From IMG/VR virus record IMGVR_UViG_3300046513_000348, positions 62,001-126,000 of that record: a stretch of DNA of 64,000 bases. One strand, 5' to 3'. Positions within the stretch are counted from its first letter, which is position 1. Every line of letters begins with the position of its first letter. The notes under the pieces were generated by a model. It saw only the letters and a list, made by a program, of their open reading frames with translations, had not been told where the DNA came from and did not search any database. Below are positions 2,081-61,542 of the stretch, piece after piece. Both the position numbers and the translations under genes were made by a program.

Positions 2081-2132
2081 CATAAAGAATGAAAATCCCC
2101 TTAGAGCAATCCGAAGATCTCTCTAAGGGGAT
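2081..2132 (-). terminator. Hairpin terminator with TATG foot
   Basis: atccccttagag...ctctaaggggat, preceded on + by CATA at 2081. Confidence 0.65.
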
Positions 2133-2169
2133 CGGATCAAAGCAGTAGGGTAGCCAACAAAAAAATATG

Positions 2170-2586
2170 TTAGCTGCCGAACTTGATCTCGACGTCGACG
2201 AAACCCGCCTGCGTGAACATGTCGCGCAAACGGATCAGGTCGCTGGTACTTGCATTCGGAACCGTGCAGATGGCGGCGCCAACTGCAACTTCACGAATCG
2301 ACGCTTGATCGATCCAGGGTTCACCCAGCATCGTTATCGAGCCGTCGGGCTTCTTGATACGATACCAGTTGTATTGACGTGGGTCATTGGGCGTACCAGC
2401 CGGCAGACGACCCGTCGAGAAGACTTCAGCATGCACGGGAGCGAGGTCGCCTTGCAGCACGATAGCCGTTTCGAACGGGAAGTAACCGAGGATTTCGATA
2501 CGCTTGAATCCGGTGCCTAAGACATTCGGGGCGTACACCTCGAAGTCATAGGTCTTTTTATTTTCCATCTGAGCCATTGCAGTCAC
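2170..2586 (-). CDS. Conserved phiKZ-like hypothetical protein, immediately upstream of DNA polymerase
   Basis: 138-aa ORF with good codon usage in the PhuZ-polymerase run. Confidence 0.75.
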   Translation of the reverse strand: MTAMAQMENKKTYDFEVYAPNVLGTGFKRIEILGYFPFETAIVLQGDLAPVHAEVFSTGRLPAGTPNDPRQYNWYRIKKPDGSITMLGEPWIDQASIREVAVGAAICTVPNASTSDLIRLRDMFTQAGFVDVEIKFGS

Positions 2587-2587
2587 C

Positions 2588-2965
2588 TTAGTAGGATGTT
2601 TCGAACTTCTTCACCACAATAGATCTGTTTTTACGGTTGTGCTCAGGACGATATTCGAAACCGTCCTCTGCGTAAATGCCATGACCGCGAAGGATATCGG
2701 CAATAAAGCGCAAGAGTACAAAAAAAGATTCCACGAACAACTTGTAGAATCTTGGATCGGGCTCGAGTTCATCACGATAGAAATTCCCCAGGCGTGACAG
2801 CTGGGGTTCATCGCGACAATCTTCGAGCTCGTAAATGAGGACGTCGAAAACTTGGTTAACGACTTCCTCTAAAACGTATTCAGGAATGCGACTGACCTTG
2901 TGCGAGAGGGCATGCGAGAAATTTCGCAGCGGCTCACGCAGGTCGATAATTACCCGCTCAGACAT
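2588..2965 (-). CDS. Hypothetical protein (possible paralog-array member)
   Basis: 125 aa, tightly packed with neighbours. Confidence 0.75.
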   Translation of the reverse strand: MSERVIIDLREPLRNFSHALSHKVSRIPEYVLEEVVNQVFDVLIYELEDCRDEPQLSRLGNFYRDELEPDPRFYKLFVESFFVLLRFIADILRGHGIYAEDGFEYRPEHNRKNRSIVVKKFETSY

Positions 2966-3381
2966 GCCCTTTCTTCCATTTCATTAACATAAGGTTCCCC
3001 GGCAGCGAGGACACTGATTACCATGTTCATATTTACTAAGCCCTCGAATTGCATTGCGGTTGGAATCCTGCCGAGGATTTCCAGTTCTTTTAAATAGCCG
3101 ACCAAGTCGACGCAGAAGTCATAAGCGGTTTGTGCTGCCCCGTCTGCTTCGTCTTCATAGATCAACCCCCTGCTAACCAGGTCCAGCGACATCACGAGAG
3201 TGTTCTCGTAAAGCTCGAAGAACTGGTTCTGATTGTTGTGATCATCATAGGCCAACGACATGGACATCATGATCATCGACTGCATGAGATCTTTTTGATA
3301 TTCTTCAGTCTGCCCGGCCGCAGAGAAGAAACTCATCCAAGTCTGAATCTTATCCTTGGTTGGAACAATGAATTTTTTCAT
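2950..3381 (-). CDS. Hypothetical acidic protein (possible paralog-array member)
   Basis: 143 aa, overlaps the next gene. Confidence 0.75.
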   Translation of the reverse strand: MKKFIVPTKDKIQTWMSFFSAAGQTEEYQKDLMQSMIMMSMSLAYDDHNNQNQFFELYENTLVMSLDLVSRGLIYEDEADGAAQTAYDFCVDLVGYLKELEILGRIPTAMQFEGLVNMNMVISVLAAGEPYVNEMEERACLSG

Positions 3382-3439
3382 GGTGTAAACAATTCGTCGA
3401 AAGCTGTCTCATAACCATTGCCGGGTGAACGATTGAAAT

Positions 3440-3799
3440 TTACTCGTATACCTCGAACTTAAGAGACATGCTCGTCGTGTGCTTTATCAAATATCGGAAG
3501 TGCAAGTGGTAGGGAGTTCTACCCGTTTGGTGTATCTCCCAGACAATCTTTCCACGCACGTCCAATAAGAACCTAAACAGCCGAGCTTTTTGTTCGTCGG
3601 TATACGGCTCGTGGTGACCCTGATACCAGGCATCACCATAGACCATGTCACGAATGTGAGTCTGATCTCGAGCGCTTCCATTGATCCCGCTACATAAACA
3701 ATCCAGGGCATCATCATAATCAACGATCCCGAATTCCAACGTAAAGAACCGACGAAACATTTTCAAAAGCGGGATTTTGTTGATGATGAGGATTGCCAT
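3440..3799 (-). CDS. Hypothetical protein (possible paralog-array member)
   Basis: 119 aa, 1 nt from the upstream gene. Confidence 0.7.
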   Translation of the reverse strand: MAILIINKIPLLKMFRRFFTLEFGIVDYDDALDCLCSGINGSARDQTHIRDMVYGDAWYQGHHEPYTDEQKARLFRFLLDVRGKIVWEIHQTGRTPYHLHFRYLIKHTTSMSLKFEVYE

Positions 3800-3800
3800 T

Positions 3801-4232
3801 TTAGAAGGATACTTCCATTGCCAAAGCTTTTGCAGGAGTCCAGTTCATGGACTTAGCACTGATTGCCAGATCACCATGCGTATCGTACAGCATGTGCATT
3901 ACGCGATAGACGAACGTATCGATCGCTTGTGCCGCATGGGCCAGGTTCATCACCTTGTAACTATCGGCAGACATGCCGTTGATCCAGGAACCAGAGATAC
4001 GCGCCATGGCGTCCTCTTCTTTACGGTTCCAGTTGTCCATTGCATACATCAGATCGTTCATGATGTAACGATGGCGTGTTTCCGCATCCATCTCGCGCTG
4101 AGTTGCGAGTACGCATGATTCGATAAAACCGTAGACCTCGCCCGGGTAGAAGTAAAAGTCCTCAGCCTTCGTTCCCAGCGCCTGGAAAACAGGTTTGAAG
4201 TCTACGATGTATTTACTAGAAGAAATAGCCAC
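3801..4232 (-). CDS. Hypothetical protein (possible paralog-array member)
   Basis: 143 aa, GTG start with GAGGA Shine-Dalgarno. Confidence 0.75.
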   Translation of the reverse strand: MAISSSKYIVDFKPVFQALGTKAEDFYFYPGEVYGFIESCVLATQREMDAETRHRYIMNDLMYAMDNWNRKEEDAMARISGSWINGMSADSYKVMNLAHAAQAIDTFVYRVMHMLYDTHGDLAISAKSMNWTPAKALAMEVSF

Positions 4233-4638
4233 GTTGGTCCTCGTAATTAGGCGGAACGTCGATTATGAGATCCATTTTGTTGAATAGGTAGAAGTGTCGA
4301 GGCAGTTCAGCAGCAATCTTCGGAAAGTGGCCAAGGATCACTTGCGAGATCCGATGCTCCAGTTCCTCCAGGACGTATTCTGCTTCCCGGTTAACCATGC
4401 AATCCAGGTTAAGAAGTTTGTATTGCTCTTCCTCGTCATACTCCTCGTCACCGAAGAACTTGTCGACCAAAGCCGTCATGATATCGCTGACATTGGTACT
4501 TGTATACGTCTTGCCCTTTTCACATGCTCGACGTATGTACCAGTTCGCTACGTTGCGAAGACTTATTACGTGATTCCCACCGCGGTAAGGCGGTTCCGGA
4601 TAAATACTACCACGATCAAATGTCTTCATGGCGAGCAT
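4216..4638 (-). CDS. Hypothetical protein (possible paralog-array member)
   Basis: 140 aa, overlaps both neighbours. Confidence 0.7.
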   Translation of the reverse strand: MLAMKTFDRGSIYPEPPYRGGNHVISLRNVANWYIRRACEKGKTYTSTNVSDIMTALVDKFFGDEEYDEEEQYKLLNLDCMVNREAEYVLEELEHRISQVILGHFPKIAAELPRHFYLFNKMDLIIDVPPNYEDQRGYFF

Positions 4639-5239
4639 CGATTTTCGCCTGTTCGTTCTTTGTCCACTGGATGACCCGCCAGTCGTCGAATTCTTCCAGC
4701 CAGAATACCCGACCGTCTTTCGAGTTGGTGAGATCGTGAAGCACGAACTGGTTAGGGTTCATGAGGTTCTTCATGAGGTCGGCGATATCTTTCAGCAAGC
4801 TGACGATGCGGACAGCTGCCTTCTTCGATTCCTCGGTGTACGCCTTTTTGTCGATGCGTTCGATCACACGCGGATCCAGATCGAAATCCAGTTCGTAGCG
4901 GATCTGATCGCGAAGACGAGCATCGATGTCGAAACCGAAGATCTTCTTCAGTTCGATGATGCTGAGAATCACATCGGCATCTTCTCCGTACACCCAGGCA
5001 CGACGACCAGAGATGATGGCGGTCATGATGGTACGAATGGAAGACTTGGCCAGATGTTCGAGAGCCCGGTTGGTCAGGTTCTCTTCCTTGATCGCTTCGA
5101 GCGTTTCAAGGATGTCCATCATCGCCATCACGTAAGGGCGCGGGTCAATGATGGTGACCTTTCTTGGTTTGTCAGATATCACGGATGTATCCATCCAATT
5201 CTGTTTGTCCGAAGACTTGGTAAACTCGGCTTCTTTCAC
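4616..5239 (-). CDS. Hypothetical protein
   Basis: 207 aa, AAGGA Shine-Dalgarno, strong codon bias. Confidence 0.75.
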   Translation of the reverse strand: MKEAEFTKSSDKQNWMDTSVISDKPRKVTIIDPRPYVMAMMDILETLEAIKEENLTNRALEHLAKSSIRTIMTAIISGRRAWVYGEDADVILSIIELKKIFGFDIDARLRDQIRYELDFDLDPRVIERIDKKAYTEESKKAAVRIVSLLKDIADLMKNLMNPNQFVLHDLTNSKDGRVFWLEEFDDWRVIQWTKNEQAKIDARHEDI

Positions 5240-5380
5240 CAGACTGTTTCCTTTTAAAATAAATGCCCCAAATCTTCGTTAAAAAGACCCGTAGTGCATT
5301 TGATTAGTGTCCGATATAAGAATATACTTGTAGAATCATAAACGCCTCAAAACGCCGTTTTGCCAAGATAAATTTTGACA

Positions 5381-5423
5381 GCATAAAAAATGCAATCCAG
5401 GAACCCGAAGGTCCCTGGATGCA
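5381..5423 (-). terminator. Terminator after phuZ
   Basis: tgcaatccaggaacc-cgaa-ggtccctggatgca (UUCG loop on minus) followed by TTTTTTATGC on minus. Confidence 0.8.
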
Positions 5424-5433
5424 CAGCTGGATA

Positions 5434-6474
5434 TTACTCGTCGAAGACCAGGCCGTTGGCAGCGACCTTTTCTTTACCGGTGGTCAGCTTGTTGCGAACC
5501 ACGCGGCTGTCGGCTTTCAGTGCGAACTCGTCACGTTGCTTGCGCAGGTTGCGCATGACGATGTCGACAAAGCCGTCGGTGATGGCGTAGTGCAGCGGGA
5601 ACTTGAGGTCCTTCTGCTCTTCGTTGACGTACATCGGAACGCCGACACGCTGGAACTCGACCGGCTGCGAAACACGGGTGTTGTTCAGCGAGTCGTTCAG
5701 GGTTGCCAGCGAGATGATCGAACGGTCACCGATTTCCAGTTTGCCTTGCTGGATGTGCAGGACCGCGACTTGCGGACCGTACGAGGTGACGCCCTTGCGG
5801 GAGAAGTCCAGGACGTTGGCGATGTCACGCGAGTCCAGGTTCTTGTTCTGGCCGGACAGCAGGACTGCCAGGCACGAGATGTCCAGCTGGATCTTGCGGT
5901 CGACGTCTTCGATGGTGCCGTCCAGACCGTTCTGCAGGTAACGCAGGACAACCGGCCGCTCGCGCAGTTCGGCCATGCTGCCGTAGCCGGACAGGACGCT
6001 GATCGTGTTCTTGATGTAGTTCAGGGTGTCGTCGCCGCCGACGGTGAAGACGATGACGTTCTGGCCCATTGCCAGCAGTTCGGAAACGATCGACGGACCC
6101 ATGACGGAACCAGAGCCGCCGGTGGTCGAGTGGACGACGATGTTCCACTTCTTCGGTTTGAAGCGCTGCAGGATCTCGCGGGTGTACTCGATGATGGTCG
6201 AGCCGTGTTCCGAGCGGACGCCGCCGGAGCCGTCGGCGGTTTCGCCGGGTTCTTTTTCGAGGTGGTAGAAGTGCTGTTCCGGCACACCGAAGGTAGATGC
6301 TTTGGAGGTGTCCAGGTATACCGGGTGCAGGGAGGCGTAGCCGGGGATGCGTTTCGCGCGATCGGCTTCGAAGTATTTCGTGATACCGATGCCAGCGCCA
6401 CCGGTACCGTAAATAGCGATCTCATCGAATTCGACGGTATCGATGTCTTTTTCTTGGGCATTCAGTTGCGACAT
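5434..6474 (-). CDS. phuZ: Phage tubulin PhuZ (spindle protein)
   Basis: YGTGGAG nucleotide loop, YLDTS, tubulin signature HSTTGGSGS, LDSRDIAN T7-like loop, GLVFDE C-terminal tail; strong codon bias. Confidence 0.93.
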   Translation of the reverse strand: MSQLNAQEKDIDTVEFDEIAIYGTGGAGIGITKYFEADRAKRIPGYASLHPVYLDTSKASTFGVPEQHFYHLEKEPGETADGSGGVRSEHGSTIIEYTREILQRFKPKKWNIVVHSTTGGSGSVMGPSIVSELLAMGQNVIVFTVGGDDTLNYIKNTISVLSGYGSMAELRERPVVLRYLQNGLDGTIEDVDRKIQLDISCLAVLLSGQNKNLDSRDIANVLDFSRKGVTSYGPQVAVLHIQQGKLEIGDRSIISLATLNDSLNNTRVSQPVEFQRVGVPMYVNEEQKDLKFPLHYAITDGFVDIVMRNLRKQRDEFALKADSRVVRNKLTTGKEKVAANGLVFDE

Positions 6475-6533
6475 TAAAATCTCCAGATTGTAAAAGATGA
6501 CGTTGGCATTGAACCTATTCCAATGCTACATCC

Positions 6534-7175
6534 TCATGGTAATATATCTACGAAAAAATATCGAGTTCGATAACTTGAACCCGGATGCTTGCGGTCTCGG
6601 AATCGACTCCGCAGTGCTCCATAGGAAATCCCTAGAGCTTTGGCAGCATCGATCATTGACGGGTAGATAGTTCCGTCGATTGAGACTGGTATCTTCCTTG
6701 CTTCCCAGGCGGCTTTGATTTTGCCTGAGTCTGCAACTCGTTTACCGATCTTACTTTGCCTGAGCTTACTTTCTTCGCTGACTTGCCGTCCGTGCCCATT
6801 CACCTTTGCATTGGTGAAGACGTTAATCAGTTTGCCAGAATCCTTAAAGAGGTCGAGAAGTTTCTGCTCTTCCTTGTAAGCCTCTTCGCGGTCCTTCACT
6901 TTATAAAAGCTCACTCGCAAGTTTTTATTTTCGTGGCGGTCGTAAAGTTCTTGGAAAGTTTTGGTTGGGTATTTCCCGGCGATCAGTTTATTCCGATGCC
7001 AGGCAATTCGAACGTACAGATTGTTCGTGCTTCCCACATAAAGCATGTCGCTTGCTTCATGGTAGATGATGTACATAGCTGCAAAGCTATGTACCTTTCG
7101 TTGTAGTCGAGCGTGTCCTTTGCGGATCGCTTCTAGAGCAGTTTGCCAGTTGTCATAAGTCTGTTTCGTTTCCAT
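6534..7175 (-). mobile_element. Free-standing GIY-YIG homing endonuclease (Seg-like) with C-terminal NUMOD/HTH DNA-binding domain
   Basis: AMYIIY...LYVGSTNNLYVR.....H, E and N catalytic positions (EEQKLL, KLIN), C-terminal IDGTIYPSMIDAAKALGISYGALRSR; lower GC than neighbours. Confidence 0.85.
6539..6565 (-). promoter_or_regulatory. Putative early (vRNAP) promoter for phuZ
   Basis: Minus strand ...GATATATTAC, containing the phiKZ early consensus TATATTAC, about 65 nt upstream of the phuZ ATG. Confidence 0.6.
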
Positions 7176-7222
7176 AACTTGTACCAGAAAAATATCACTA
7201 ACCTTTGGTTGTGATCATCTTA

Positions 7223-7249
7223 ATGATATATTCTTAACCTTATTTAAAA
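7223..7249 (-). promoter_or_regulatory. Putative early promoter
   Basis: ttttaaataaggttaagaatatatcat aligns ungapped with the 10935 and 50152 sites. Confidence 0.55.
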
Positions 7250-7262
7250 GAGGACTTTCCCC

Positions 7263-8075
7263 ATGCATGCTGGTGGTGCAGTTGAGAAGGCTCTGAGTGA
7301 AATCAAATACCAGATTCCGGAAGAGATCTTGGATTTGGTCTTCATTAAGAAAGCCTATACCTACCGCGACAGGCCTACCAACCTGGATCGCGAAATCATC
7401 AAAAAGGTTATCGGTCCCCGTGTCATGGTGGACTGCAACCTGTTGGGTGGCGTGGACTACATTGTCCCGCTGCTTGACATCTATCGCGAAACCACTGAAG
7501 AGTGGATGGCGATTTACCGGATCCCGAAAGAGTTCACGGACAATCGAAGCATCATGTCGATCCTCGGTATCATGTACATCAACCCTTACATGGTCTCGGC
7601 TCCTGCCGGTCAGAACGTACAAGGCTGGTCGCATGTGATGGCAACTTCCCAGGCCGTCCTGGATGCGATGTCGCCTATCCCGAACTTCACTTCTTCGGAA
7701 GTATCGCTGGAAGGTGAGAACACGATCCTCGTTCGCGATGCCCGTGTACTGCCGCAGTTCAGCTATGCTCGATGCATTCTGTCGTACGACGAGTACATGA
7801 GCAACATCAATCCTCGCTCGTATATAGCTTTCTCGAAGATGTGCGTACTTGCAGTCAAGTCGTTCATCTGGAAGAACCGCGTCATTCCAATGGACAAAGG
7901 CGAAATGACCGCTGGCGTTACGCTGGGTGCGATCAAGGAAGTCATCGACGAATACCGCGATGCGGAAGAACAATACCAGGACTATCGCATGAACACGATG
8001 CGTAAAGTTCTGATGATGAATGACGATGTGCAGAAGCGTCGTCTCATTACCCGCATCGTTGGCGGCTACCGATAG
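7263..8075 (+). CDS. Conserved phiKZ-like hypothetical protein
   Basis: 270 aa, GAGGA Shine-Dalgarno, phage-typical codon usage, followed by a terminator. Confidence 0.8.
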   Translation: MHAGGAVEKALSEIKYQIPEEILDLVFIKKAYTYRDRPTNLDREIIKKVIGPRVMVDCNLLGGVDYIVPLLDIYRETTEEWMAIYRIPKEFTDNRSIMSILGIMYINPYMVSAPAGQNVQGWSHVMATSQAVLDAMSPIPNFTSSEVSLEGENTILVRDARVLPQFSYARCILSYDEYMSNINPRSYIAFSKMCVLAVKSFIWKNRVIPMDKGEMTAGVTLGAIKEVIDEYRDAEEQYQDYRMNTMRKVLMMNDDVQKRRLITRIVGGYR

Positions 8076-8085
8076 CAAACAAAAG

Positions 8086-8118
8086 TATACTCCAGGCCGC
8101 AAGGCCTGGAGTATATGC
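8086..8118. terminator. Bidirectional hairpin, family 1
   Basis: tatactccaggcc-gcaa-ggcctggagtata plus TATGC, between convergent genes. Confidence 0.8.
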
Positions 8119-8126
8119 CGCATGCT

Positions 8127-8897: not shown

Positions 8898-8949
8898 AAG
8901 TCACCTTAAGAGTATTGTGTTATTTTTTACATAGAATCTCCGGCAAAAC

Positions 8950-8979
8950 CATACACTCCTGGCGTTTGCCAGGAGTGTA
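8950..8979 (-). terminator. Hairpin, family 1
   Basis: tacactcctggc-gttt-gccaggagtgta with CATA at 8950. Confidence 0.75.
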
Positions 8980-8981
8980 GT

Positions 8982-9125
8982 TTAATGCATGCCATCGTAA
9001 AGCCAGGCAACCACTTTGGCCATCCAGCGGAATCGATAAGGTCCGAAAACCTCAGTCAGCTTTCCCCAGTAAACTTTTGCTACCCAGCGCTTTCCTTCTT
9101 TCACTACTTCCGTACGTGTCACCAT
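8982..9125 (-). CDS. Small basic, Trp-rich hypothetical protein (47 aa)
   Basis: Below the ORF-track cutoff. GGAGAG Shine-Dalgarno then MVTRTEVVKEGKRWVAKVYWGKLTEVFGPYRFRWMAKVVAWLYDGMH*; bounded by hairpins. Confidence 0.65.
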   Translation of the reverse strand: MVTRTEVVKEGKRWVAKVYWGKLTEVFGPYRFRWMAKVVAWLYDGMH

Positions 9126-9147
9126 TGTTCTCTCCAATGCAAAAAAA

Positions 9148-9201
9148 ATACCAGGAGTGAACCTGGTATTAAAAGACTCCCGGTGATCGGGACGGGAGTC
9201 T
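9148..9201 (-). terminator. Tandem hairpins followed by a U-tract on minus
   Basis: aataccagg/cctggtatt and gactcccg/cgggagtc. Confidence 0.6.
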
Positions 9202-9216
9202 GGGCCCTGCTGATTC

Positions 9217-10215: not shown

Positions 10216-10263
10216 GTTAAACTCCATTGTAAAAAGTTTGCACTGTTCAGAGCATCTCGCTCT

Positions 10264-10914: not shown

Positions 10915-10934
10915 TACTGACTATCTTCACGGGA

Positions 10935-10961: not shown

Positions 10962-10976
10962 TTGAGTTTACTCGAG

Positions 10977-11009
10977 CATAAAACTAGGGTGAGTTTTACC
11001 CCACCCTAG
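10977..11009 (-). terminator. Hairpin plus TTTTATGC
   Basis: ctagggtg...caccctag directly after the AAA ATPase stop codon. Confidence 0.7.
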
Positions 11010-16312: not shown

Positions 16313-16356
16313 GCATATACTCCTACTCCTGGCTTGCGCCAGGAGTAGGAGTATGC
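16313..16356. terminator. Bidirectional hairpin, family 1, TATG on both sides
   Basis: atactcctactcctggc-ttgc-gccaggagtaggagtat flanked by GCATA and TATGC. Confidence 0.85.
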
Positions 16357-18576: not shown

Positions 18577-18618
18577 CATAAGGTTAGTACTCGACTGAGC
18601 TTTCGCCCAGTCGAGTAC
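18577..18618 (-). terminator. Hairpin (GAAA loop) with TATG upstream of terL
   Basis: Minus strand gtactcgactgggc-gaaa-gctcagtcgagtac...TTATG. Confidence 0.75.
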
Positions 18619-26995: not shown

Positions 26996-27029
26996 CCGCC
27001 TACCCCGCAAGGGGTAGGTGGACTTATGC
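26996..27029. terminator. Bidirectional hairpin (GCAA loop) plus TATGC
   Basis: ccgcctacccc-gcaa-ggggtaggtgg between convergent genes. Confidence 0.8.
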
Positions 27030-29198: not shown

Positions 29199-29230
29199 GC
29201 ATATATCCCAGGGGCTTGTGGCCCCTGGGA
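29199..29230 (-). terminator. Hairpin plus TATGC
   Basis: tcccaggggc-ttgtg-gcccctggga with GCATA at 29199. Confidence 0.75.
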
Positions 29231-32522: not shown

Positions 32523-32554
32523 CATAAATGGGTGAGGATATACCTCACCCATTT
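32523..32554 (-). terminator. Hairpin plus TATG after the vRNAP beta gene
   Basis: aaatgggtgagg-atata-cctcacccattt. Confidence 0.75.
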
Positions 32555-44899: not shown

Positions 44900-44937
44900 A
44901 TACGAGAGTGGGGAAACCCACTCTCGTATTTATTATG
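44900..44937 (+). terminator. Hairpin (GAAA loop) plus TATG
   Basis: atacgagagtggg-gaaa-cccactctcgtat then TTATTATG. Confidence 0.8.
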
Positions 44938-46864: not shown

Positions 46865-46899
46865 GCATATACTCCTGGCCGCGAGGCCAGGAGTATATG
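46865..46899. terminator. Bidirectional hairpin, family 1, TATG on both sides
   Basis: catatactcctggcc-gcga-ggccaggagtatatg. Confidence 0.85.
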
Positions 46900-53140: not shown

Positions 53141-53230
53141 GATTCCGCTATCCTTATTGAGGCCCGATAATTGAGCGAGTGCTCATCTTATCGGGCTAAA
53201 AGGAGAGCGATCTTTCACGCTCTCCGGTGT

Positions 53231-54749: not shown

Positions 54750-55628
54750 ATGGATAACGTCTTTGGCGCCCAGCACTTTTCTGACCGTGACCCGGAACAG
54801 AACCTGATTCAAATGAACGCTCTGTTCATGGATCTCATCACCCAATCGGCAACGGCTGACTGCCAGAGCTTCCCCCTGAAGGAGCATTTCGCTGACTTCT
54901 ACATGAAGGCCCGCTTCTCGATCGAGAACACCTTCGACAAACTCATGTCGGTCTCCCCGATCGAATTGCGTCCCTACGGCATCTTCCAGCGCTTCGTCAA
55001 CTCGATGCCTTACTCGGACACGATGCAATACCGTGCCGAAGTTCCTGAAGGCCTGCGGGTGACCTATCTGGATTACCTGGAAGTCCTGATTCCTGCCCAG
55101 CAGCGTGCCAACAAGATCATCGCGGACGTGATCGATCCGTTCACCAAGTTCGTCGGCAAAATGATCAGCGATGAGATCTACCGCAATCAGGTCGGCCACG
55201 AGATCAAGGAATTCAAGAAGCTCGAACCGGAATATCAGAAGACCATCAAGGACTTCAGTAACTGCTTCGGCAAGAACGACTACCACTCCTCGGCAGCTTT
55301 CGGCGAAGTCGTCAAGCGCTCGAATGATTGGCGTGTCGTGTTCGAGAATACTTTCGAACTGCGCGACTACTACAGGGAATTCCCGCACAAGGAAATCTCC
55401 GCGAAGCTGAACCGCCTGTACGAAATGCTCGACACCCTGATCGACCAGGTCAAGCTCGACCATTACGCCGCAGTCGAAAAGAACGTGACCCAGCTGCTCT
55501 CGACCGGCATGTATCACATCGCCAAAGAGATCGAACTGGCTGCCCTGACGACCTTCCGTACGAAGACCTTCATCACGGCAATCAACACCACGATCATGAA
55601 CATCGAGGAAATGGCTTACGCAACTTAA
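54750..55628 (+). CDS. Probable virion (head) protein, phiKZ gp153-like
   Basis: 292 aa, helical, VPEGL..TYLDY; synteny between uvsX and RNase H. Confidence 0.6.
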   Translation: MDNVFGAQHFSDRDPEQNLIQMNALFMDLITQSATADCQSFPLKEHFADFYMKARFSIENTFDKLMSVSPIELRPYGIFQRFVNSMPYSDTMQYRAEVPEGLRVTYLDYLEVLIPAQQRANKIIADVIDPFTKFVGKMISDEIYRNQVGHEIKEFKKLEPEYQKTIKDFSNCFGKNDYHSSAAFGEVVKRSNDWRVVFENTFELRDYYREFPHKEISAKLNRLYEMLDTLIDQVKLDHYAAVEKNVTQLLSTGMYHIAKEIELAALTTFRTKTFITAINTTIMNIEEMAYAT

Positions 55629-55647: not shown

Positions 55648-55693
55648 GCATACTACTCTACCAGTCCCCTAGGGGACTGGTAGAGGCTTATGC
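55648..55693. terminator. Perfect 30-bp palindrome, bidirectional, TATGC on both sides
   Basis: ctctaccagtcccct|aggggactggtagag with GCATA at 55648 and TATGC at 55689. Confidence 0.85.
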
Positions 55694-55700: not shown

Positions 55701-56120
55701 TTAAGGCATTACGAACAGTTCATCTTTCTTCACGAGCAGCTCGCGTACGTCTTCGACGATCTTCTTCGTCTGTCCGTAAACAAGCCAGCAGGGCATCAAT
55801 ACAACGATCTGTCTTGCCATCCGTGTGAGTTCCTGATCGGTGAGTTCAGAGCTCAGGCGAATGGGGCATACCAGATTTTCGATCGGACGGTTGGACCAGA
55901 TCTTATCGTTGTAGGCGAGCGGTAAGGCCACCGCGTCAGGGTCCTTGCACAAGTCGAACTTCTCTTGCAGGCGAAGTCGGGTCGTCCTGTCTAATTCTGC
56001 CTGACCGGAAACCTTCCCGGACAAAGATGACAGGAACACGAGACGTTTGGTGCGCCGGGGGAGTATATGAAAGAGGACCCTCAGCGCTCTGGAACGGAAT
56101 CTCTTGTTGGGTTGGTTCAT
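55701..56120 (-). CDS. Hypothetical protein
   Basis: 139-aa basic ORF. Confidence 0.7.
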   Translation of the reverse strand: MNQPNKRFRSRALRVLFHILPRRTKRLVFLSSLSGKVSGQAELDRTTRLRLQEKFDLCKDPDAVALPLAYNDKIWSNRPIENLVCPIRLSSELTDQELTRMARQIVVLMPCWLVYGQTKKIVEDVRELLVKKDELFVMP

Positions 56121-56153: not shown

Positions 56154-57734
56154 TTACTTGGCCTTTTTCTTACCCGCTTTGTTCAAGCGGAGATTGGAGT
56201 AGTAACCACAGTAAGCCCCGACGTCATCATTACTTTGGATAACGGTGAAGTAGCGGAAGACACCCGGCGATTCTTCCCACGACAGCATCGTGACTTTCGG
56301 CACCGATTCTTCAACACGCTTCAGGCCATTGCGATCGGGAAGATCGATGCCGAAGGTGAGAATCGTTGGGAGGACGTGCTCGACGCCATTCGAATCGCGG
56401 AAATTAGCGTCAACAGAGATCGAAGCTACCCCAGGCTTGATCGACGCTAAAAGCTTCGCTACGTGTACGTCCTGCTTCTTCTTCTGGATCACGGACGCTT
56501 CATATAAATGAGGCGTAAGATCGGTAATCGTGAAGCGTTTTGCTTCGTCTTTACCATCCAGGAAGTCGTTCATCCACATGGCAACGTTGTTCATTGCCAT
56601 GACCGCTTCAAGGGCCTTCTTGGGCGGTTCGATGACTTCGGTGACGATCTGTTTATCAGCCGATACCATGCTGTTGCTGTGGCTCACGGGCTGGTAGACC
56701 GAGAAGGTTCCGTATTCCGTGAACTGCTTGAAGACCATCGGCTTGAAGAAGGTGCTCAGGTGAGCGACCACCATCTCGTTTGCTTGTTCGCCGTTCTCGC
56801 AGTGGAACTCGATCAGCTTCTCGATGGACTCGATTGGCTGTGCAAGTTTCAGCACGGAGTACGACGTATCGGACAGGCGCTTGCCGAACAGGCCCAGGTC
56901 CTTGTCTACTGCACCCATGTAGTAGGTGCCGGGAACGTGATTCGAATGATCACCGTTGAAGAACAGCTTCTGATGGACCATGAGCGGATGCTTGTCCACT
57001 TCGCCCATCTTCCAATAGCCAGTTGCTTCCGAACGCTTGATGATGGGTTCTTTCATGCCAGCAACGGTCATGTTCTTGCCCAGGTTCGCGTTCATGTCGG
57101 CCATGACGTTACCCATGAAGATCGAATGACCCTTCAGCCACGAAGCGTGGATGTTAAAGTCTTTCATCTCGTTCTTCAGACGCCAGGCACGTTTCCACAG
57201 CTCGACGTTCTTGATGGTCTGGCCATCGCGACGGCACCAGTTGTTCTTTGCCCACAGCGGCAGCACTTTGTTCCAGCCATCGAGCGTGTATTCGCTATCC
57301 GCATAGATTTGGATTGTGCGAATGTTTTCACGCTGGCAGTATTCCAGCGCCATGATGAGAGCGCAGAGCTCGGCCACGTTGTTGGTGGTACGCAGGCCAG
57401 GTTCGTCGATTGGTGCAGGACCGAAGCCGTCCAGATAGAACAGCGGAGTTACTTCCTGGGCTTCCATGAAACGATCGAGAATGCTGATCGTCTCTTCGTT
57501 CATGTAACGCTCGTCCAGGCTTTCGTAAGGGTTCCCACCCTTACGATGAGCGTCCAGCATCGTCTTCTCGACGTAGCCTTCATTGGTTACGTAGTAGTCG
57601 GCGTTGCCGCTACCTTTCTTGGGCGCCTCCAGCGAATACGCATAGCCGTGGAATCCCCAACCACCGTCACCGGGATTAGGAACGCACGAACCATCCGTAT
57701 GCAGGATGATCGCATCGATTTTTTGTTCACTCAT
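56154..57734 (-). CDS. rnhA: Ribonuclease HI with a long C-terminal extension (phiKZ gp155-like)
   Basis: HTDGSC.PNPG.GGWG, TNNVAEL, DSEY, KNVELW, WLKGH, GNVMAD. Confidence 0.92.
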   Translation of the reverse strand: MSEQKIDAIILHTDGSCVPNPGDGGWGFHGYAYSLEAPKKGSGNADYYVTNEGYVEKTMLDAHRKGGNPYESLDERYMNEETISILDRFMEAQEVTPLFYLDGFGPAPIDEPGLRTTNNVAELCALIMALEYCQRENIRTIQIYADSEYTLDGWNKVLPLWAKNNWCRRDGQTIKNVELWKRAWRLKNEMKDFNIHASWLKGHSIFMGNVMADMNANLGKNMTVAGMKEPIIKRSEATGYWKMGEVDKHPLMVHQKLFFNGDHSNHVPGTYYMGAVDKDLGLFGKRLSDTSYSVLKLAQPIESIEKLIEFHCENGEQANEMVVAHLSTFFKPMVFKQFTEYGTFSVYQPVSHSNSMVSADKQIVTEVIEPPKKALEAVMAMNNVAMWMNDFLDGKDEAKRFTITDLTPHLYEASVIQKKKQDVHVAKLLASIKPGVASISVDANFRDSNGVEHVLPTILTFGIDLPDRNGLKRVEESVPKVTMLSWEESPGVFRYFTVIQSNDDVGAYCGYYSNLRLNKAGKKKAK

Positions 57735-58745: not shown

Positions 58746-60047
58746 ATGGACATTATCAAAGGCTTTGCTCTGAATCGCAATTTCATCAATAACACCCCAG
58801 GTGTTGTTGCTGATATTGGCGAGTTGTCGACTAAGGGCTTCACGTTCGTCAAGGAACCCCGCGTTTATTCCTCGCAAACATATCCCACAATATCACTGGT
58901 GCACTTCCCTTCGCCGGGTAGTGGTGTGGGCACGTCCGCTTCGATTCCGGATGCCCAGAAAGACCATATCCTGAAGGTCATCAACAAGATTTACGAGAAG
59001 TCGGCCAGTGCAACCATCGTGTTCGCTCCGGGCGCTTTCATCGAATACCTGTTGGCTCAGATGGGTAATGAAGTCGCCGACATCACCGTCGGAGGCGTCG
59101 TTGCCAATGGCAACTACTCGATCATCGAATGGATCCAATGGCGTAACACGGCAGGTAGCGCCGGTAACGTCAACAAGATCTGGTTCTCGAATGCGGCATT
59201 CGAAGGCCAGTTCGACGAATACGAAATCACGGTCATTCCGCCGTTCCTGCCCCCGAATCAGTTCTTCGGCCAGCCTGCTGAAGTCAAGTATCTCCTGGGC
59301 AACCTGAGCTACTCGCAGGAAGTGGAAAAGATTCAGGACGCCCGCGGCAAATCGTCCGAGACCATCCTCTGGGGTAATACGTACAACTACGTGAACCCAG
59401 TGAATCAGAATGACAAGACGCCTGCGAAGTTCACCTGCCTGATCTACGGTATGGCAGGCAACAACATCGACCTGATCAAGGACGCGATCGTTCAGTACCT
59501 GCTGGCGAACTCGACCTACACTCGTGACCAGTGGAAGAACATCCTGCCGGATCTTTTTCTGCGGACTGAATTCCTGATCTTCCCGCAGTGGGAACGTATG
59601 GCGATCGAGAATGTGGTCGGCAGCAACAACGGCATCTTCTCGCCGGTCGTTGACCTGACCGCGATCATGAACAAGCTGGTGGTCGAATCGGTCGAATACG
59701 ACGAGACTCACGTCCGCACCAACGGCCAGGCATTTACCTTCCCGTACATGTCGGTTGCCGCTACCTCGATCGGTCACATCGAAAACCGCGATGGCAAGAA
59801 GAAAATCACGGATTGGTATCCGGACTACTTCTTCGTGAACAATACGAACGCCGACTTCAACCGCATGTCGCTCACCACTCAGGAATGGGTACTGATGATC
59901 ATGGAAATGTTGAAGATCGCCCGCGACCTGACCACGAGCTCCACGATCCCGCAGGGTTACTCCCGCGTTAAACGTGGCACCCGCCTCTTCCTGGCCAAGA
60001 GCCACAAGAGCGTCCAATACCTCGTGGCAGCGCCTGGTACCTACTAA
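58746..60047 (+). CDS. Virion structural protein (phiKZ-like)
   Basis: 433 aa; IKGF, GELS, KIWFS...F..QFDEYEI, W..ILPDLF.RTEF. Confidence 0.7.
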   Translation: MDIIKGFALNRNFINNTPGVVADIGELSTKGFTFVKEPRVYSSQTYPTISLVHFPSPGSGVGTSASIPDAQKDHILKVINKIYEKSASATIVFAPGAFIEYLLAQMGNEVADITVGGVVANGNYSIIEWIQWRNTAGSAGNVNKIWFSNAAFEGQFDEYEITVIPPFLPPNQFFGQPAEVKYLLGNLSYSQEVEKIQDARGKSSETILWGNTYNYVNPVNQNDKTPAKFTCLIYGMAGNNIDLIKDAIVQYLLANSTYTRDQWKNILPDLFLRTEFLIFPQWERMAIENVVGSNNGIFSPVVDLTAIMNKLVVESVEYDETHVRTNGQAFTFPYMSVAATSIGHIENRDGKKKITDWYPDYFFVNNTNADFNRMSLTTQEWVLMIMEMLKIARDLTTSSTIPQGYSRVKRGTRLFLAKSHKSVQYLVAAPGTY

Positions 60048-60685
60048 TGGCGAACGAACTCTTGCCATCGATTGGCATGTCGGGGCAATGGAAACTCAAA
60101 GCCCCGTTTGACACCAAGATCGTTGCGAACCTCACCTACACTTGTAAAGAAGTCCGCAAGCTGGGTGCGATGATTGCAGCGGGTGTCGATGCCTTCGAAG
60201 AATTCTACGTTCCAAACGAAATCACTCGTGACGTGTACGACCAACACGTCGCTAGCGATATCTCGGTCATCACTCTGTCCTCTTCGTCTGGCAACTGGAT
60301 TAATGTCCCGACGCCTTACCTGGATGGCTGGCCCAATGCTAACGTAATCCCTTACGTTGTCGTTGGTCTGATCGCTGATATCGGTGCATTACCCAACACG
60401 ATTGATCCGACATTCCTTGCCGAGAAGGTGAAGAACACGATCATGAGTTCCCTGGGTCATGAACCCCAGATCACTTTCGTTGCTCTGTCGGAAGTCACCA
60501 ACATGCCTTTCGATGAGCACGAAGCTCTGGAGAATCTCCGTATGTCGAACATCGAGGACGACAACACGGATTACTCCCGCCGTATCAAAGCCGAAGCTGA
60601 CCTGGCAAAAGCGCGCGCAGAAATTGCCGCACTCCAGCAGTTCATCATCGACTCGGGTGTACCAATTCCAGTTGTGACCGGATAA
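60047..60685 (+). CDS. Conserved phiKZ-like hypothetical/virion protein
   Basis: 212 aa, TAATG overlap, C-terminal coiled coil. Confidence 0.75.
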   Translation: MANELLPSIGMSGQWKLKAPFDTKIVANLTYTCKEVRKLGAMIAAGVDAFEEFYVPNEITRDVYDQHVASDISVITLSSSSGNWINVPTPYLDGWPNANVIPYVVVGLIADIGALPNTIDPTFLAEKVKNTIMSSLGHEPQITFVALSEVTNMPFDEHEALENLRMSNIEDDNTDYSRRIKAEADLAKARAEIAALQQFIIDSGVPIPVVTG

Positions 60686-60691
60686 ACAAAA

Positions 60692-60731
60692 GACATACCT
60701 ATCCTGCCCTCGCGGGCAGGATAGGATTATG
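60692..60731. terminator. Bidirectional hairpin, family 2, TATG on both sides
   Basis: cctatcctgccc-tcgc-gggcaggatagg. Confidence 0.85.
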
Positions 60732-60736
60732 TTCGT

Positions 60737-61513
60737 TTAGTACAGAGTCGAGATTGGAGTAAAGTCAGAAACAGCCAAGCACTTGTTATACAAGCGAATT
60801 CGATCCATATTACCGTTGATGCCAGAATAGCCAGGGCCGCCATTTCGAGCATCGTAATAATTACCGATGTACAGGTTCGAACCGAAGCCGATTGCCGAGT
60901 TATAAATCTCAGTCGATGTTCCAACAAGCTTACCTCCCAAGAAGAGGTAGACCTTGCCGTCCTTACGGCCAACGGCATGATGCTGCCATAAACCATTCGC
61001 AGCACGCATGGTTGCCTTGACGAGTGTCCTGGACGAAGTGCCGCCGTCAGTAACGTTCAAGATCGGATAGAGATCCGACAGGCCCCAGAAACTCATACCG
61101 CCTGCGGCAGTAAAGGCACCGTAAGAAAGGAAGACGTTATTGCCGCCGGTGAATGTATAGTTGCCCTGACCGTTGCAGAACGCCCAGGTTTCGAACCAGA
61201 AGTCCCCAGGGAAATTCAGTTCGGCGGATCGTGGCGTATACAGACTACCACAAGCTGACGAAGGCTGTTGCGACTGAAGGAAGCTCTGCGTACCGTTGAT
61301 TTTTCGTGCAGTCGACAAACTAACGTCAGCAGCCTGGATCGTTCCGTAGGTACGTGCCGTATTAACGGAGTCCTTCCAGGAGGCTCCTTCAAAGTCCATC
61401 GCCAGGACAGCTCCGCTGTCGCCGTACGAAAAGCCCTTCTTTTTCAAAAGGTTAGATTCAAGCATAGAGTATTGCTCCTTAGATTTCATAGGATTTCGCG
61501 TAAATACGGACAT
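60737..61513 (-). CDS. LamG/concanavalin A-like lectin-fold protein
   Basis: VLAMDFEG, GDFWFETW, WQHHAVGR, YLFLGG, GNMDRIRLY. Confidence 0.8.
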   Translation of the reverse strand: MSVFTRNPMKSKEQYSMLESNLLKKKGFSYGDSGAVLAMDFEGASWKDSVNTARTYGTIQAADVSLSTARKINGTQSFLQSQQPSSACGSLYTPRSAELNFPGDFWFETWAFCNGQGNYTFTGGNNVFLSYGAFTAAGGMSFWGLSDLYPILNVTDGGTSSRTLVKATMRAANGLWQHHAVGRKDGKVYLFLGGKLVGTSTEIYNSAIGFGSNLYIGNYYDARNGGPGYSGINGNMDRIRLYNKCLAVSDFTPISTLY

Positions 61514-61542
61514 AACCATCCTACCCTTTCGGGTAGGATGGA
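61509..61542 (-). terminator. Hairpin, family 2 (GAAA loop on minus), with TATG
   Basis: ccatcctaccc-tttc-gggtaggatgg after the sbcC stop codon. Confidence 0.8.

What the first reader, a model, noticed from the sequence alone, without database searches (positions are those of the whole stretch)
2081..61542. Hairpin+TATG(C) element replaces the U-tract at most gene ends and is doubled at convergent junctions
Seen: about 15 hairpins (2081, 5381, 8086, 8950, 10977, 16313, 18577, 26996, 29199, 32523, 44900, 46865, 55648, 60692, 61509) have TATG at or near the 3' foot in the transcribed direction, often with a weak or absent U-tract. At four convergent junctions (16313, 46865, 55648, 60692) TATG appears on both strands. 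Established: TATG is the phiKZ late-promoter core. Inference: at convergent junctions there is no sense gene to drive, so TATG is either a phage-RNAP-specific termination or RNA-processing signal, or it launches antisense transcripts. Some 'late TSS' calls could be processed ends.
Basis: partly seen in the sequence, partly recalled or inferred. Interest (0 to 1): 0.65.

Follow-up and report, generated by a model that had tools for sequence, protein, structure and literature searches.

The report
Jumbo-phage terminators: hairpin plus TTATG
The hairpin-plus-TATG elements are real and are this phiKZ-like phage's version of a conserved transcription terminator already mapped by RNA sequencing in phiKZ, so the finding is sound but largely known; why the terminator shares TATG with the late-promoter core is still unexplained.

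Summary
The window is part of a 218.7-kb phiKZ-like (Chimalliviridae) phage genome that is syntenic with Ralstonia phage RSF1. All 15 cited hairpins exist and fold strongly. Each has TATG at or just past its 3' foot on the transcribed strand.

The enrichment is far beyond chance. In the window, 18 of 25 terminator-side flanks carry TATG, against 4.5 expected. In the genome it is 55 of 94 against 13.8. At convergent junctions it is 27 of 32 sides.

The motif is longer than TATG: TTATG-Y-Y-G/T-T, with the G usually 4-8 nt after the last G:C pair of the stem. This matches the published phiKZ terminator motif (hairpin + YTTATKYYGT; 61 sites with mapped 3' ends; bidirectional at convergent genes). 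In the phiKZ tables I read, no transcription start is called at a terminator's own TATG.

RSF1 keeps the signal at orthologous junctions even where the stem sequence has been replaced. The termination reading is therefore supported. The antisense-promoter and "late TSS are processed ends" readings are not.

"Most gene ends" is overstated: 25 of 57 genes have a hairpin, about 17 of those carry TATG, and U-tracts often co-occur or substitute.

Verdict: a new member of a known kind. The unexplained part is the shared TATG of terminator and late-promoter core.

The parts
2081..2134 (-). Bulged hairpin (2095-2134, UUCG loop) followed by a T-rich spacer and TTTATGCCGT (TATG 2081-2084). It lies between gene 2170-2577(-) and the DNA polymerase gene start at 2054.
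   Evidence: Fold -26.8 kcal/mol, z -4.3. TATG coordinates. Exact match to YTTATKYYGT.
5382..5420 (-). Hairpin 5395-5420 (UUCG loop), then a U-run, then TTTATGCTGT (TATG 5382-5385), downstream of the PhuZ-like gene 5434-6474(-).
   Evidence: Fold -24.1 kcal/mol, z -4.9.
8086..8117 (.). Terminator at a convergent junction (7263-8075 + / 8127-8897 -). The + side reads TATATGCCGC (TATG 8114-8117). The - side has a U-rich tail (CTTTTGTTTGC) and no TATG.
   Evidence: Fold -26 kcal/mol, z -6.2.
8950..8979 (-). Hairpin 8952-8979 whose foot overlaps TATGGTTTTGCC (TATG 8950-8953), downstream of an unannotated stretch or gene 9217-9408(-).
   Evidence: Fold -24.1 kcal/mol, z -5.4.
10977..11009 (-). Hairpin 10984-11009 followed by TTTTATGCTCG (TATG 10977-10980), downstream of gene 11015-12334(-).
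   Evidence: Fold -18.9 kcal/mol, z -3.9.
16314..16355 (.). Bidirectional terminator between 15738-16310(+) and the terminase gene 16364-18547(-). The stem is 17 bp. TATG lies on both strands: 16352-16355 on +, followed by CTTTTGTTTT, and 16314-16317 on -, followed by CCGTC.
   Evidence: Folds -35.3 and -35.0 kcal/mol, z -7.9 and -10.2.
18577..18618 (-). Hairpin 18587-18618 (GAAA loop) followed by TAACCTTATGACGC (TATG 18577-18580), between 18625-20307(-) and the terminase start. The RSF1 orthologue has a different stem but the same AACCTTATGAC tail.
   Evidence: Fold -26.5 kcal/mol, z -5.4. Orthologue comparison.
26996..27028 (.). Terminator at a convergent junction (26100-26966 + / 27034-28002 -). 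The + side reads ACTTATGCCGC (TATG 27025-27028). The - side reads CCTTATTTTTTTTG, i.e. TTAT followed by a U-tract.
   Evidence: Fold -28.9 kcal/mol, z -3.5.
29200..29230 (-). Hairpin 29206-29230 followed by TATATGCTGTTC (TATG 29200-29203), downstream of the head-protease-like gene 29243-30022(-).
   Evidence: Fold -25.6 kcal/mol, z -4.7.
32523..32554 (-). Hairpin 32526-32554 whose foot runs into TTTATGTCTGTC (TATG 32523-32526), downstream of the 1476-aa RNAP subunit gene 32567-36997(-). The RSF1 orthologue keeps both the stem and the ATGTCTGTC tail.
   Evidence: Fold -20.1 kcal/mol, z -5.1. Orthologue comparison.
44900..44937 (+). Hairpin 44900-44929 (GAAA loop) followed by TTATTATGACC (TATG 44934-44937), between the co-directional genes 38649-44891(+) and 44964-46850(+). 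A TTTATGCACC also lies on the opposite side.
   Evidence: Fold -26.9 kcal/mol, z -6.8.
46866..46899 (.). Bidirectional terminator between 44964-46850(+) and 46907-48157(-). TATATG forms the foot of the stem on both strands (46896-46899 on +, 46866-46869 on -), and each is followed by a T-rich tail. It is nearly identical in RSF1.
   Evidence: Folds -35.9 and -28.5 kcal/mol, z -9.8 and -7.0.
55649..55692 (.). Bidirectional terminator between 54750-55628(+) and 55701-56120(-). The + side reads GCTTATGCTGT (TATG 55689-55692) and the - side reads TAGTATGCCGC (TATG 55649-55652). Neither side has a U-tract.
   Evidence: Folds -28.5 and -26.7 kcal/mol, z -5.1 and -4.9.
60694..60731 (.). Bidirectional terminator between 60047-60685(+) and 60737-61465(-). 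The + side reads ATTATGTTCG (TATG 60728-60731) and the - side reads TATGTCTTTTG (TATG 60694-60697).
   Evidence: Folds -27.8 and -26.2 kcal/mol, z -6.9 and -6.5.
61511..61541 (-). Hairpin 61516-61541 (GAAA loop) followed by TTATGTCCGTA (TATG 61511-61514), downstream of the SbcC-like gene 61549-64074(-).
   Evidence: Fold -25.4 kcal/mol, z -6.5.
9147..9170 (-). Example of the second terminator class in the same window: a hairpin followed by a plain U-tract (TTTTTTTTGC) with no TATG. Others of this class or with weak tails are 12392-12415, 51938-51967, 53202-53225 and 48206-48237.

Best explanation
These are the phage's transcription terminators, of the type already described for phiKZ. Each is an RNA hairpin at the end of a transcription unit: a GC-rich stem of 10-17 bp with a purine-rich 3' arm and a GNRA or UUCG tetraloop on the transcribed strand. 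The hairpin is followed by a short U-rich stretch that usually reads (U)UUAU, and then by G-Y-Y-G/U-U. The G lies about 4-8 nt after the last G:C pair, which is where intrinsic terminators normally release the RNA. At convergent gene pairs one palindromic element (CATAA-stem-loop-stem-TTATG) serves both strands, so TATG appears on both strands.

What is shown here: the anatomy, the enrichment, the strand and position rules, and the conservation in RSF1.

What is taken from experiments on relatives: transcript 3' ends map within a few nt of the G of TATG at the equivalent phiKZ elements, and no start site is called there.

What is inferred: UUAU gives a weak RNA:DNA hybrid, and the U-then-G step acts as a pause, as in the Y(-1)G(+1) elemental pause of multisubunit RNAPs (my own knowledge). 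Together they would take over the role of a long U-tract. Whether TATG is read specifically by the polymerase is open.
For: Identity of the phage: the genome is a phiKZ-like phage syntenic with RSF1 and encodes split RNAP subunits, including a homologue of phiKZ gp123.

Enrichment: 18/25 in the window, 55/94 in the genome and 27/32 convergent sides carry TATG, against shuffle means of 4.5, 13.8 and 5.9.

Directionality: terminator sides 52/94 against opposite sides 11/68.

Extended consensus only at hairpins: after TATG, Y in 44/52, Y in 51/52, G/T in 43/52, T in 29/52. The 91 other intergenic TATGs show nothing of this. Of 51 TATGYYKT sites in the genome, 29 directly follow a GC hairpin, against 2-7 for control words.

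Geometry: the G lies 4-8 nt after the last G:C pair in 36/48 cases, with the mode at 7.

RNA-level bias: loops read as GNRA or UNCG on the transcribed strand in 23/39 cases, against 7/39 if read on the other strand. The 3' arm is G-rich in 35 cases against 13.

Position tied to the hairpin, not to the next gene: the TATG-to-start-codon distance ranges over 20-143 nt without a peak.

Conservation: RSF1 shows 44/92 against 10 expected. At orthologous junctions TATG is kept in 15/18 while the stems are often entirely different.

Literature: phiKZ has 61 terminators with a stem-loop + YTTATKYYGT and six bidirectional ones. The Table S4 rows show TTATG tails with 3' ends at about -4 to +4 from the G, and CATAA...TTATG pairs at convergent genes. 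Motif A of 201phi2-1 resembles it, and eight 201phi2-1 terminators stop transcription in a terminator trap.
Against: There are no RNA data for this phage, so ends and starts are not mapped here.

3' ends mapped in phiKZ cannot by themselves separate termination from processing or trimming back to a hairpin.

The phiKZ stem consensus (CCYCCCC...GGGRRGG) is not matched here: 0 hits with up to 3 mismatches. The exact 10-mer YTTATKYYGT occurs only 3 times in the window against 1.5 expected, so the similarity is one of architecture and a degenerate tail.

One hairpin at a divergent junction (genome 128529, outside the window) has TATG facing both genes, which looks like a promoter arrangement.

A relative with 31% GC (G001) shows little enrichment, 12/50 against 6 expected, so the element is not universal in the family.
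Confidence: 0.8

Rival explanations
1. Terminator-plus-promoter modules. The hairpin ends the upstream unit. The TATG behind it is a late promoter of the non-virion RNAP (start at G) that restarts transcription into the next gene, and at convergent junctions it fires antisense RNA.
For: [quoted passage not shown] At co-directional junctions here the G is always at least 20 nt upstream of the next start codon, leaving room for a leader. A hairpin at a divergent junction has TATG facing both genes. TATG is depleted inside genes on both strands (Markov O/E 0.69 sense, 0.52 antisense, the lowest of 256 words; synonymous shuffles give 328 observed against 620), as expected for a polymerase signal.
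Against: 27/32 sides at convergent junctions have TATG where there is no gene to drive. The YYGT extension is specific to hairpins, and no conservation downstream of TATG was reported for phiKZ late promoters. In the phiKZ tables read (P008-P126) no start is called at a terminator's own TATG or at the bidirectional terminators, and nearby late starts use a second TATG. The upstream regions of the major capsid and tail sheath genes here have no TATG. The distance to the next gene is unconstrained. The depletion test is confounded by general TpA avoidance.
Confidence: 0.1
2. RNA processing or stability element. Transcripts read through and are then cut in the single-stranded UUAUG next to the hairpin, or trimmed back to it. 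The hairpin then protects the 3' end, and TATG marks a nuclease site.
For: 3'-end mapping in phiKZ cannot distinguish termination from processing. The hairpins carry very stable tetraloops, typical of protective 3' structures. The genome encodes a ribonuclease-annotated homologue (RSF1 ORF057; window 56154-57734).
Against: 201phi2-1 terminators reduce downstream expression in uninfected host cells, without phage nucleases, although which motifs those eight carried was not checked here. The 4-8 nt spacing from the stem and the U-rich tail fit termination geometry. Many elements also carry or alternate with ordinary U-tracts.
Confidence: 0.07
3. A DNA-level element: cruciform-forming inverted repeats or a small repeated cassette spread through intergenic DNA (for recombination or replication), in which TATG is merely part of the repeat.
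For: Several stems are similar to one another (for example ATACTCCTGGC-type stems at 8086, 8952, 16317 and 46864). 16317 matches genome position 156261 at 82-91% identity.
Against: The element is directional relative to gene ends (52/94 against 11/68). The loops show a bias that depends on the RNA strand. Orthologous stems in RSF1 are often unrelated in sequence while the structure and the tail persist, which indicates selection on function rather than a copied repeat.
Confidence: 0.02

Closest known systems
Conserved phiKZ terminator motif, stem-loop + 5'-TTAT-3' region (BCCYCCCCHWWDGGGRRGGBYTTATKYYGT; Putzeys et al. 2024, PMC10914365)
   Same: A GC-rich hairpin with a purine-rich 3' arm, followed within 1-3 nt by (Y)TTAT-G/T-Y-Y-G-T. 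It sits after gene ends. At convergent genes it forms palindromic CATAA...TTATG pairs with ends mapped on both strands. The phage family and the polymerases are the same.
   Different: The stem sequence differs (ACUCCUGGC-like or varied here, CCYCCCC in phiKZ), and the phiKZ consensus string finds nothing in the window. The host clade and GC content differ (52% here). Transcript ends have not been mapped for this phage.
201phi2-1 terminator motif A (and the A/B combinations), Microb Biotechnol 2024, PMC11512511
   Same: The authors describe it as strongly resembling the phiKZ terminator motif. There are 132 mapped ends, 15 of them bidirectional, and several were shown to work in a terminator trap.
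   Different: The motif sequence itself was not available to me (no supplement is held), so the match to this window is indirect.
phiKZ late promoter core TATG (G = +1), recognised by nvRNAP subunit gp123 (PMC4666361, PMC12809450)
   Same: The same four bases. The polymerase family is the same, and a gp123 homologue is present with 7 of 14 pocket residues identical.
   Different: phiKZ late promoters have no upstream hairpin and no reported conserved bases after TATG. Here TATG comes with a hairpin and a YYGT extension, occurs where there is no gene to drive, and is absent upstream of the capsid and sheath genes.
Canonical bacterial intrinsic (Rho-independent) terminators, including bidirectional ones (own knowledge)
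   Same: A GC-rich hairpin followed by a U-rich segment, with release a few nt past the stem. A palindromic version serves convergent genes. About a third of the elements here also have a real U-run.
   Different: In 37 of 52 TATG-type sides there is no run of at least 6 U in 8. A specific A and G interrupt the tract, and bases downstream of the release point are conserved.
Elemental pause consensus G(-10) Y(-1) G(+1) of multisubunit RNAPs (own knowledge; not tested here)
   Same: A U-to-G step lies 6-7 nt after a G-rich stem arm, which fits Y(-1)G(+1) with a G-rich position near -10.
   Different: It was defined for bacterial RNAP. No pausing data exist for jumbo-phage polymerases.

Membership tests
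phiKZ-type conserved terminator (hairpin + YTTATKYYGT) | GC-rich stem-loop placed just after gene ends or transcription-unit ends | tested here: met
   89 of 295 hairpins lie in the 8.5% of the genome that is intergenic. All 15 cited sites fold with z -3.5 to -10. 25 of 57 window genes have one downstream.
phiKZ-type conserved terminator (hairpin + YTTATKYYGT) | 3' tail (Y)TTAT-K-Y-Y-G-T directly behind the stem | tested here: met
   The position matrix gives T,T before TATG and then Y 44/52, Y 51/52, G/T 43/52, T 29/52. The G lies 4-8 nt after the last G:C pair in 36/48. TTAT followed by a U-run (K = T) also occurs.
phiKZ-type conserved terminator (hairpin + YTTATKYYGT) | Stem sequence CCYCCCC / GGGRRGG as in the published consensus | tested here: not met
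   0 matches to the 30-mer consensus with up to 3 mismatches. The stems here vary; only the purine/G-rich 3' arm is shared (35 against 13).
phiKZ-type conserved terminator (hairpin + YTTATKYYGT) | Bidirectional form at convergent genes | tested here: met
   16 of 17 convergent junctions in the genome carry a hairpin, and 27/32 sides have TATG. Four of six in the window are two-sided. phiKZ pairs T012/13, T018/19, T059/60 and T070/71 look the same.
phiKZ-type conserved terminator (hairpin + YTTATKYYGT) | Transcript 3' ends map at the element | not testable with these tools
   No RNA run holds this phage. The four 'metatranscriptomic' sets are contigs of 90-95% relatives and show no ends.
phiKZ-type conserved terminator (hairpin + YTTATKYYGT) | Conservation in related phages independent of stem sequence | tested here: met
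   RSF1 shows 44/92 against 10 expected. At orthologous junctions TATG is kept in 15/18 with a median stem-arm similarity of 0.72 and several unrelated stems. It is not met in the AT-rich relative G001 (12/50 against 6).
phiKZ late promoter (TATG, start at G) | TATG immediately upstream of mapped 5'-triphosphate starts of late genes | not testable with these tools
   No RNA data for this phage. In phiKZ, starts are not called at terminator TATGs.
phiKZ late promoter (TATG, start at G) | Occurs upstream of late (structural) genes irrespective of hairpins | tested here: not met
   The upstream regions of the capsid gene (genome 177948-180167) and the tail sheath gene (window 23976-26081) have no TATG. 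The 91 hairpin-free intergenic TATGs show no shared context. 27/32 convergent sides have TATG with no gene downstream.
Canonical intrinsic terminator | Hairpin followed by a U-tract (here: at least 6 U in 8) | tested here: inconclusive
   Of 94 terminator sides, 37 have TATG only, 15 have TATG and U, 21 have U only and 21 have neither. The short UUAU may act as a minimal tract.

The most novel reading that the evidence does not exclude
The same four bases serve to start and to stop. The pocket of the beta-like RNAP subunit (phiKZ gp123) that binds non-template TATG at late promoters would also catch TATG in the transcription bubble during elongation. That would give a sequence-specific pause with the RNA end a few nt past the hairpin, which replaces the long U-tract. 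The doubling at convergent junctions and the genome-wide avoidance of TATG inside genes would both follow from this. I found no paper that makes this link: TATG is not mentioned in the terminator paper, and termination is not mentioned in the open-promoter structure paper I searched.
Probability: 0.2. Interest if true: 0.75.

Novelty: new member of a known kind. Interest (0 to 1): 0.35.

Why it matters
For annotation, the hairpin + TTATGYY element gives a simple, strand-specific marker of transcription-unit ends in RSF1-type jumbo phages. Standard terminator finders, which expect a U-tract, score these elements poorly. It also shows that the phiKZ terminator design extends to phages of Ralstonia/Burkholderia-type hosts with 52% GC, though not to every relative.

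For mechanism, the terminator tail contains exactly the TATG that the non-virion polymerase reads at late promoters. That raises a question which can be tested directly: how do these sigma-less polymerases decide to start or to stop at the same bases? Terminators that work without a U-tract are also useful parts for engineering.

Tried and rejected
RNA evidence:
- The look-up of sequencing runs found only DNA-type metagenome contigs (rhizosphere and soil).
- Laying four 'metatranscriptomic' contig sets on 26601-32600 gave fragments of relatives at 90-95% identity and no information on ends.

Polymerase-specific classes:
- I looked for a split between U-tract and TATG terminators by genome region (20-kb bins) and found none.
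- I looked for a split by the nearest upstream promoter-like motif (early-like ATATAT or TTTTACA) and found no association.
- phiKZ early-region terminators also read TTATG.

gp123 pocket conservation: 7 of 14 residues are identical and several changes are conservative. The AT-rich relative that lacks the motif has the same residues, so the test does not discriminate.

Wider comparison: the search for related loci with the terminase returned only two loci. One full relative (G001) was analysed and showed little enrichment. RSL2 and SURPRISE13 were not fetched.

Strict pattern searches with the published consensus gave 0 hits for the 30-mer and 3 for the 10-mer.

Rfam: no family matched in the window. 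Sigma-70-like promoter matches are at chance level in 1-20000 (17 against 16.7).

Codon-aware depletion of TATG is real (z = -13), but other TA-containing words share it, so it is only weak support for a signal.

The supplements of the journal versions of both transcriptome papers are not held. The bioRxiv supplement of the phiKZ paper was used instead. I read phiKZ TTS rows T001-T076 and TSS rows P008-P126, not the whole tables.

Full report
What the window is. The 64-kb window is bases 62001-126000 of a 218,660-bp IMG/VR virus record with 52% GC. Its nearest DNA relatives are Ralstonia phages RSF1 and RSL2 and Burkholderia phage SURPRISE13. Gene order and orientation follow RSF1 (Chiangmaivirus, a phiKZ-like jumbo phage): DNA polymerase, PhuZ tubulin, terminase, tail sheath, head protease, split RNA polymerase subunits and a 2080-aa tail fibre/transglycosylase. 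I called genes with a self-trained Markov model combined with tblastn against RSF1. This gave 208 genes covering 92% of the genome. DNA runs holding the sequence come from rhizosphere and soil metagenomes.

Checking the observation. A scan for inverted repeats (stem of at least 8 bp, loop 3-9) finds 295 hairpins, and 89 of them lie in the 8.5% of the genome that is intergenic.

In the window, 18 of 25 flanks on the side into which a gene is transcribed contain TATG between -8 and +16 of the stem end. Shuffled flanks give a mean of 4.5 and never more than 10 in 2000 trials. On the opposite sides the count is 3 of 17. Genome-wide the figures are 55 of 94 against 13.8 expected. At convergent junctions they are 27 of 32 sides against 5.9. 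TATG is the single most common 4-mer in these flanks.

Three corrections apply.
- Six convergent junctions in the window carry a hairpin. Four are two-sided for TATG (16317, 46868, 55656, 60698). Two (8086, 26996) have TATG on the + side and a U-rich tail on the - side.
- Only 25 of 57 genes in the window have a downstream hairpin; the rest sit inside operons. About 17 of the 25 carry TATG. So the element marks most transcription-unit ends, not most gene ends.
- U-rich runs often accompany TATG (15 of 52 sides genome-wide) or replace it (21 sides).

Anatomy. Aligned on TATG, the hairpin-linked copies share more than four bases. T is favoured at the two preceding positions. After the G come Y (44/52), Y (51/52), G or T (43/52) and T (29/52). 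The 91 other intergenic TATGs show no such context. Of 51 TATGYYKT sites in the whole genome, 29 directly follow a GC-rich hairpin, while control words of similar composition do so 2-7 times. The G lies 4-8 nt after the last G:C pair of the stem in 36 of 48 cases, most often 7 nt.

On unidirectional elements the four-base loops read GNRA or UNCG on the transcribed strand in 23 of 39 cases, against 7 of 39 if read on the other strand. Fifteen of 16 convergent hairpins have GNRA on one strand. The 3' arm of the stem is G-rich in 35 cases against 13. These strand-dependent properties point to a function in the RNA or in the transcribing complex, not to a symmetric DNA element. The distance from the G to the next start codon at co-directional junctions ranges from 20 to 143 nt without a peak. 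The TATG is therefore positioned by the hairpin, not by the downstream gene.

Conservation. RSF1 shows the same enrichment: 44 of 92 terminator-side flanks against 10 expected (maximum 20), and 22 of 34 convergent sides. At junctions flanked by orthologous genes the stems are often completely different in sequence between the two phages, yet a hairpin is present and the tail is kept. Examples are AACCTTATGAC after the gene upstream of terminase, and TCTTATGACG at genome position 217065. Own TATG corresponds to RSF1 TATG in 15 of 18 sides, and the asymmetric junctions (TATG on one side, U-run on the other) stay asymmetric.

A more distant relative does not share the pattern. It has 31% GC and a terminase 68% identical, and I fetched it whole. 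It shows only 12 of 50 against 6 expected, and it has long hairpins with ATAT loops instead. The element is therefore widespread in the family but not universal.

What is already known. In phiKZ the late promoter is TATG with the G as the start, and each of the four bases is needed for transcription by the non-virion polymerase in vitro. A 2026 structure shows the beta-like subunit gp123 binding the non-template TATG in a pocket under the beta-lobe. The authors describe that pocket as incomplete in the transcribing complex.

Separately, ONT-cappable-seq of phiKZ found that 61 terminators share a stem-loop followed by a TTAT region, with consensus BCCYCCCCHWWDGGGRRGGBYTTATKYYGT. It also found six bidirectional terminators at convergent genes. 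In the supplementary table (rows T001-T076) the tails read TTATG in most of these. By my count the stated 3' end falls between about -4 and +4 of the G. The pairs T012/T013, T018/T019, T059/T060 and T070/T071 are CATAA-hairpin-TTATG palindromes between convergent genes. The 201phi2-1 study reports a motif that 'strongly resembles' it, and shows that eight terminators of that phage work in a terminator trap in the uninfected host.

In the phiKZ start-site table (rows P008-P126) most late starts have no hairpin upstream. None is called at a terminator's own TATG or at the bidirectional terminators. The few late starts close to a terminator (P049, P054, P075) use a second TATG about 5-20 nt further on.

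Interpretation. The best reading is that these elements are the phage's terminators, the RSF1-clade counterpart of the phiKZ motif. That the element marks transcript ends is taken from the experiments on relatives. It could not be tested here because no RNA data exist for this phage.

How it works is inferred. The hairpin, a weak UUAU hybrid and a U-to-G step a few nt past the stem resemble a minimal intrinsic terminator combined with an elemental pause (Y at -1, G at +1; my own knowledge). The conserved YYGT lies just downstream of the release point.

The promoter reading is weak for the hairpin-linked copies. They occur where there is nothing to drive. They carry an extension not reported for phiKZ late promoters. 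The capsid and sheath genes of this phage have no TATG upstream. One hairpin at a divergent junction outside the window (genome 128529) has TATG facing both genes and is the best case for a promoter role. Processing or trimming to the hairpin cannot be excluded without biochemistry.

The shared TATG. The coincidence between the terminator tail and the late-promoter core is not discussed in the papers I could search. TATG is depleted within genes of this phage. By a trinucleotide Markov expectation, O/E is 0.69 on the sense strand and 0.52 on the antisense strand, the lowest of all 256 words. Against synonymous-codon shuffles it is 328 observed against 620 expected. This fits a polymerase signal, but general TpA avoidance contributes.

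The gp123 homologue here (genome 174886-176574, 28% identity) keeps 7 of 14 pocket residues, including the Phe that stacks on G. The relative without the motif has the same residues, so this test says nothing either way. phiKZ early-region terminators also use TTATG. I found no link between terminator class and promoter-like motif class or genome region. There is therefore no evidence that the element is specific to one polymerase. RSF1 and RSL2 are reported to be rifampicin-sensitive, so host polymerase may also transcribe parts of such genomes.

Verdict. The termination reading is supported, while the antisense-promoter and processed-end readings are not. The element is a new member of a known kind. 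What remains of interest is whether TATG is actively read during termination.

Noticed in passing
window 7226, 10938, 50155 (ATATAT cores); genome-wide 22 intergenic sites, e.g. genome 31831, 35170, 55691, 72938, 210141: A long AT-rich motif of the form ...AATTTCAG-N-ATATAT-(C/T/A)A... recurs in intergenic DNA, mostly oriented with the downstream gene. It resembles the phiKZ early promoter (TTTAAGATCTATATTAC in the published table) and is probably the early (virion RNAP) promoter of this phage.
   Followed up: partly
window e.g. 6495-6501(-), 10236-10242(-), 28540-28560(-), 29080-29090(-); genome-wide 27 intergenic TTTTACA: TTTTACA(A) sits upstream of start codons, just before the Shine-Dalgarno. 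27 of its 40 copies are intergenic. 21 lie within 60 nt upstream of a same-strand gene start, mostly 8-25 nt from it. RSF1 has 9 such sites. It is a second promoter-like or leader motif of unknown role, and differs from the phiKZ middle motif.
   Followed up: partly
whole genome, coding regions: TATG is one of the most avoided 4-mers inside genes (sense O/E 0.69; antisense 0.52, the lowest of 256; 328 observed against 620 in synonymous shuffles). ATAT and GAGG are also strongly avoided. The avoidance of TA-containing words in general confounds this.
   Followed up: partly
window 23890-23916 (divergent junction between 22963-23862(-) and tail sheath 23976-26081(+)): A small A/T-ended hairpin between two divergent late genes is conserved in RSF1 with changes on both arms (TTTATCGCC/GGCAATAAA here, TTTATTGCCG/CGACAATAAA in RSF1). 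There is no TATG on the sheath side. It may be a regulatory element of the divergent promoters.
   Followed up: no
genome 128529-128552 (window coordinate 66529, just outside the window): A hairpin at a divergent junction has TATG on both sides, each facing a gene, and RSF1 keeps the arrangement. It is the one case that looks like a hairpin-linked promoter rather than a terminator.
   Followed up: no
loci L012-L022 (IMGVR_UViG_3300007083_000004, 200,349 bp, 31% GC): A relative with a 68%-identical terminase has long intergenic hairpins (14-22 bp), very often with ATAT loops, and little TATG enrichment. This is a different terminator style within the same phage family.
   Followed up: partly
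window 8086, 8952, 16317, 46864; genome 156261: Several terminator stems are near-copies of one another (ATACTCCTGGC-type). 16317 matches genome 156261 at 82-91% identity. Such repeats could serve as recombination points.
   Followed up: no
window 20308-20370 (upstream of 20320-22908(-)): An imperfect hairpin (CCCTACCTGCC...GGTGGGTAGGG) is followed by TTCTTTTTATG, in which the ATG is the called start codon of the 862-aa structural gene. Here TATG overlaps a start codon, so it cannot be a start site for that gene.
   Followed up: no
window 1-20000: Sigma-70-like promoter matches are at chance level (17 against 16.7 in shuffles). This fits transcription mainly by phage polymerases, although RSF1 and RSL2 are reported to be rifampicin-sensitive.
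   Followed up: no
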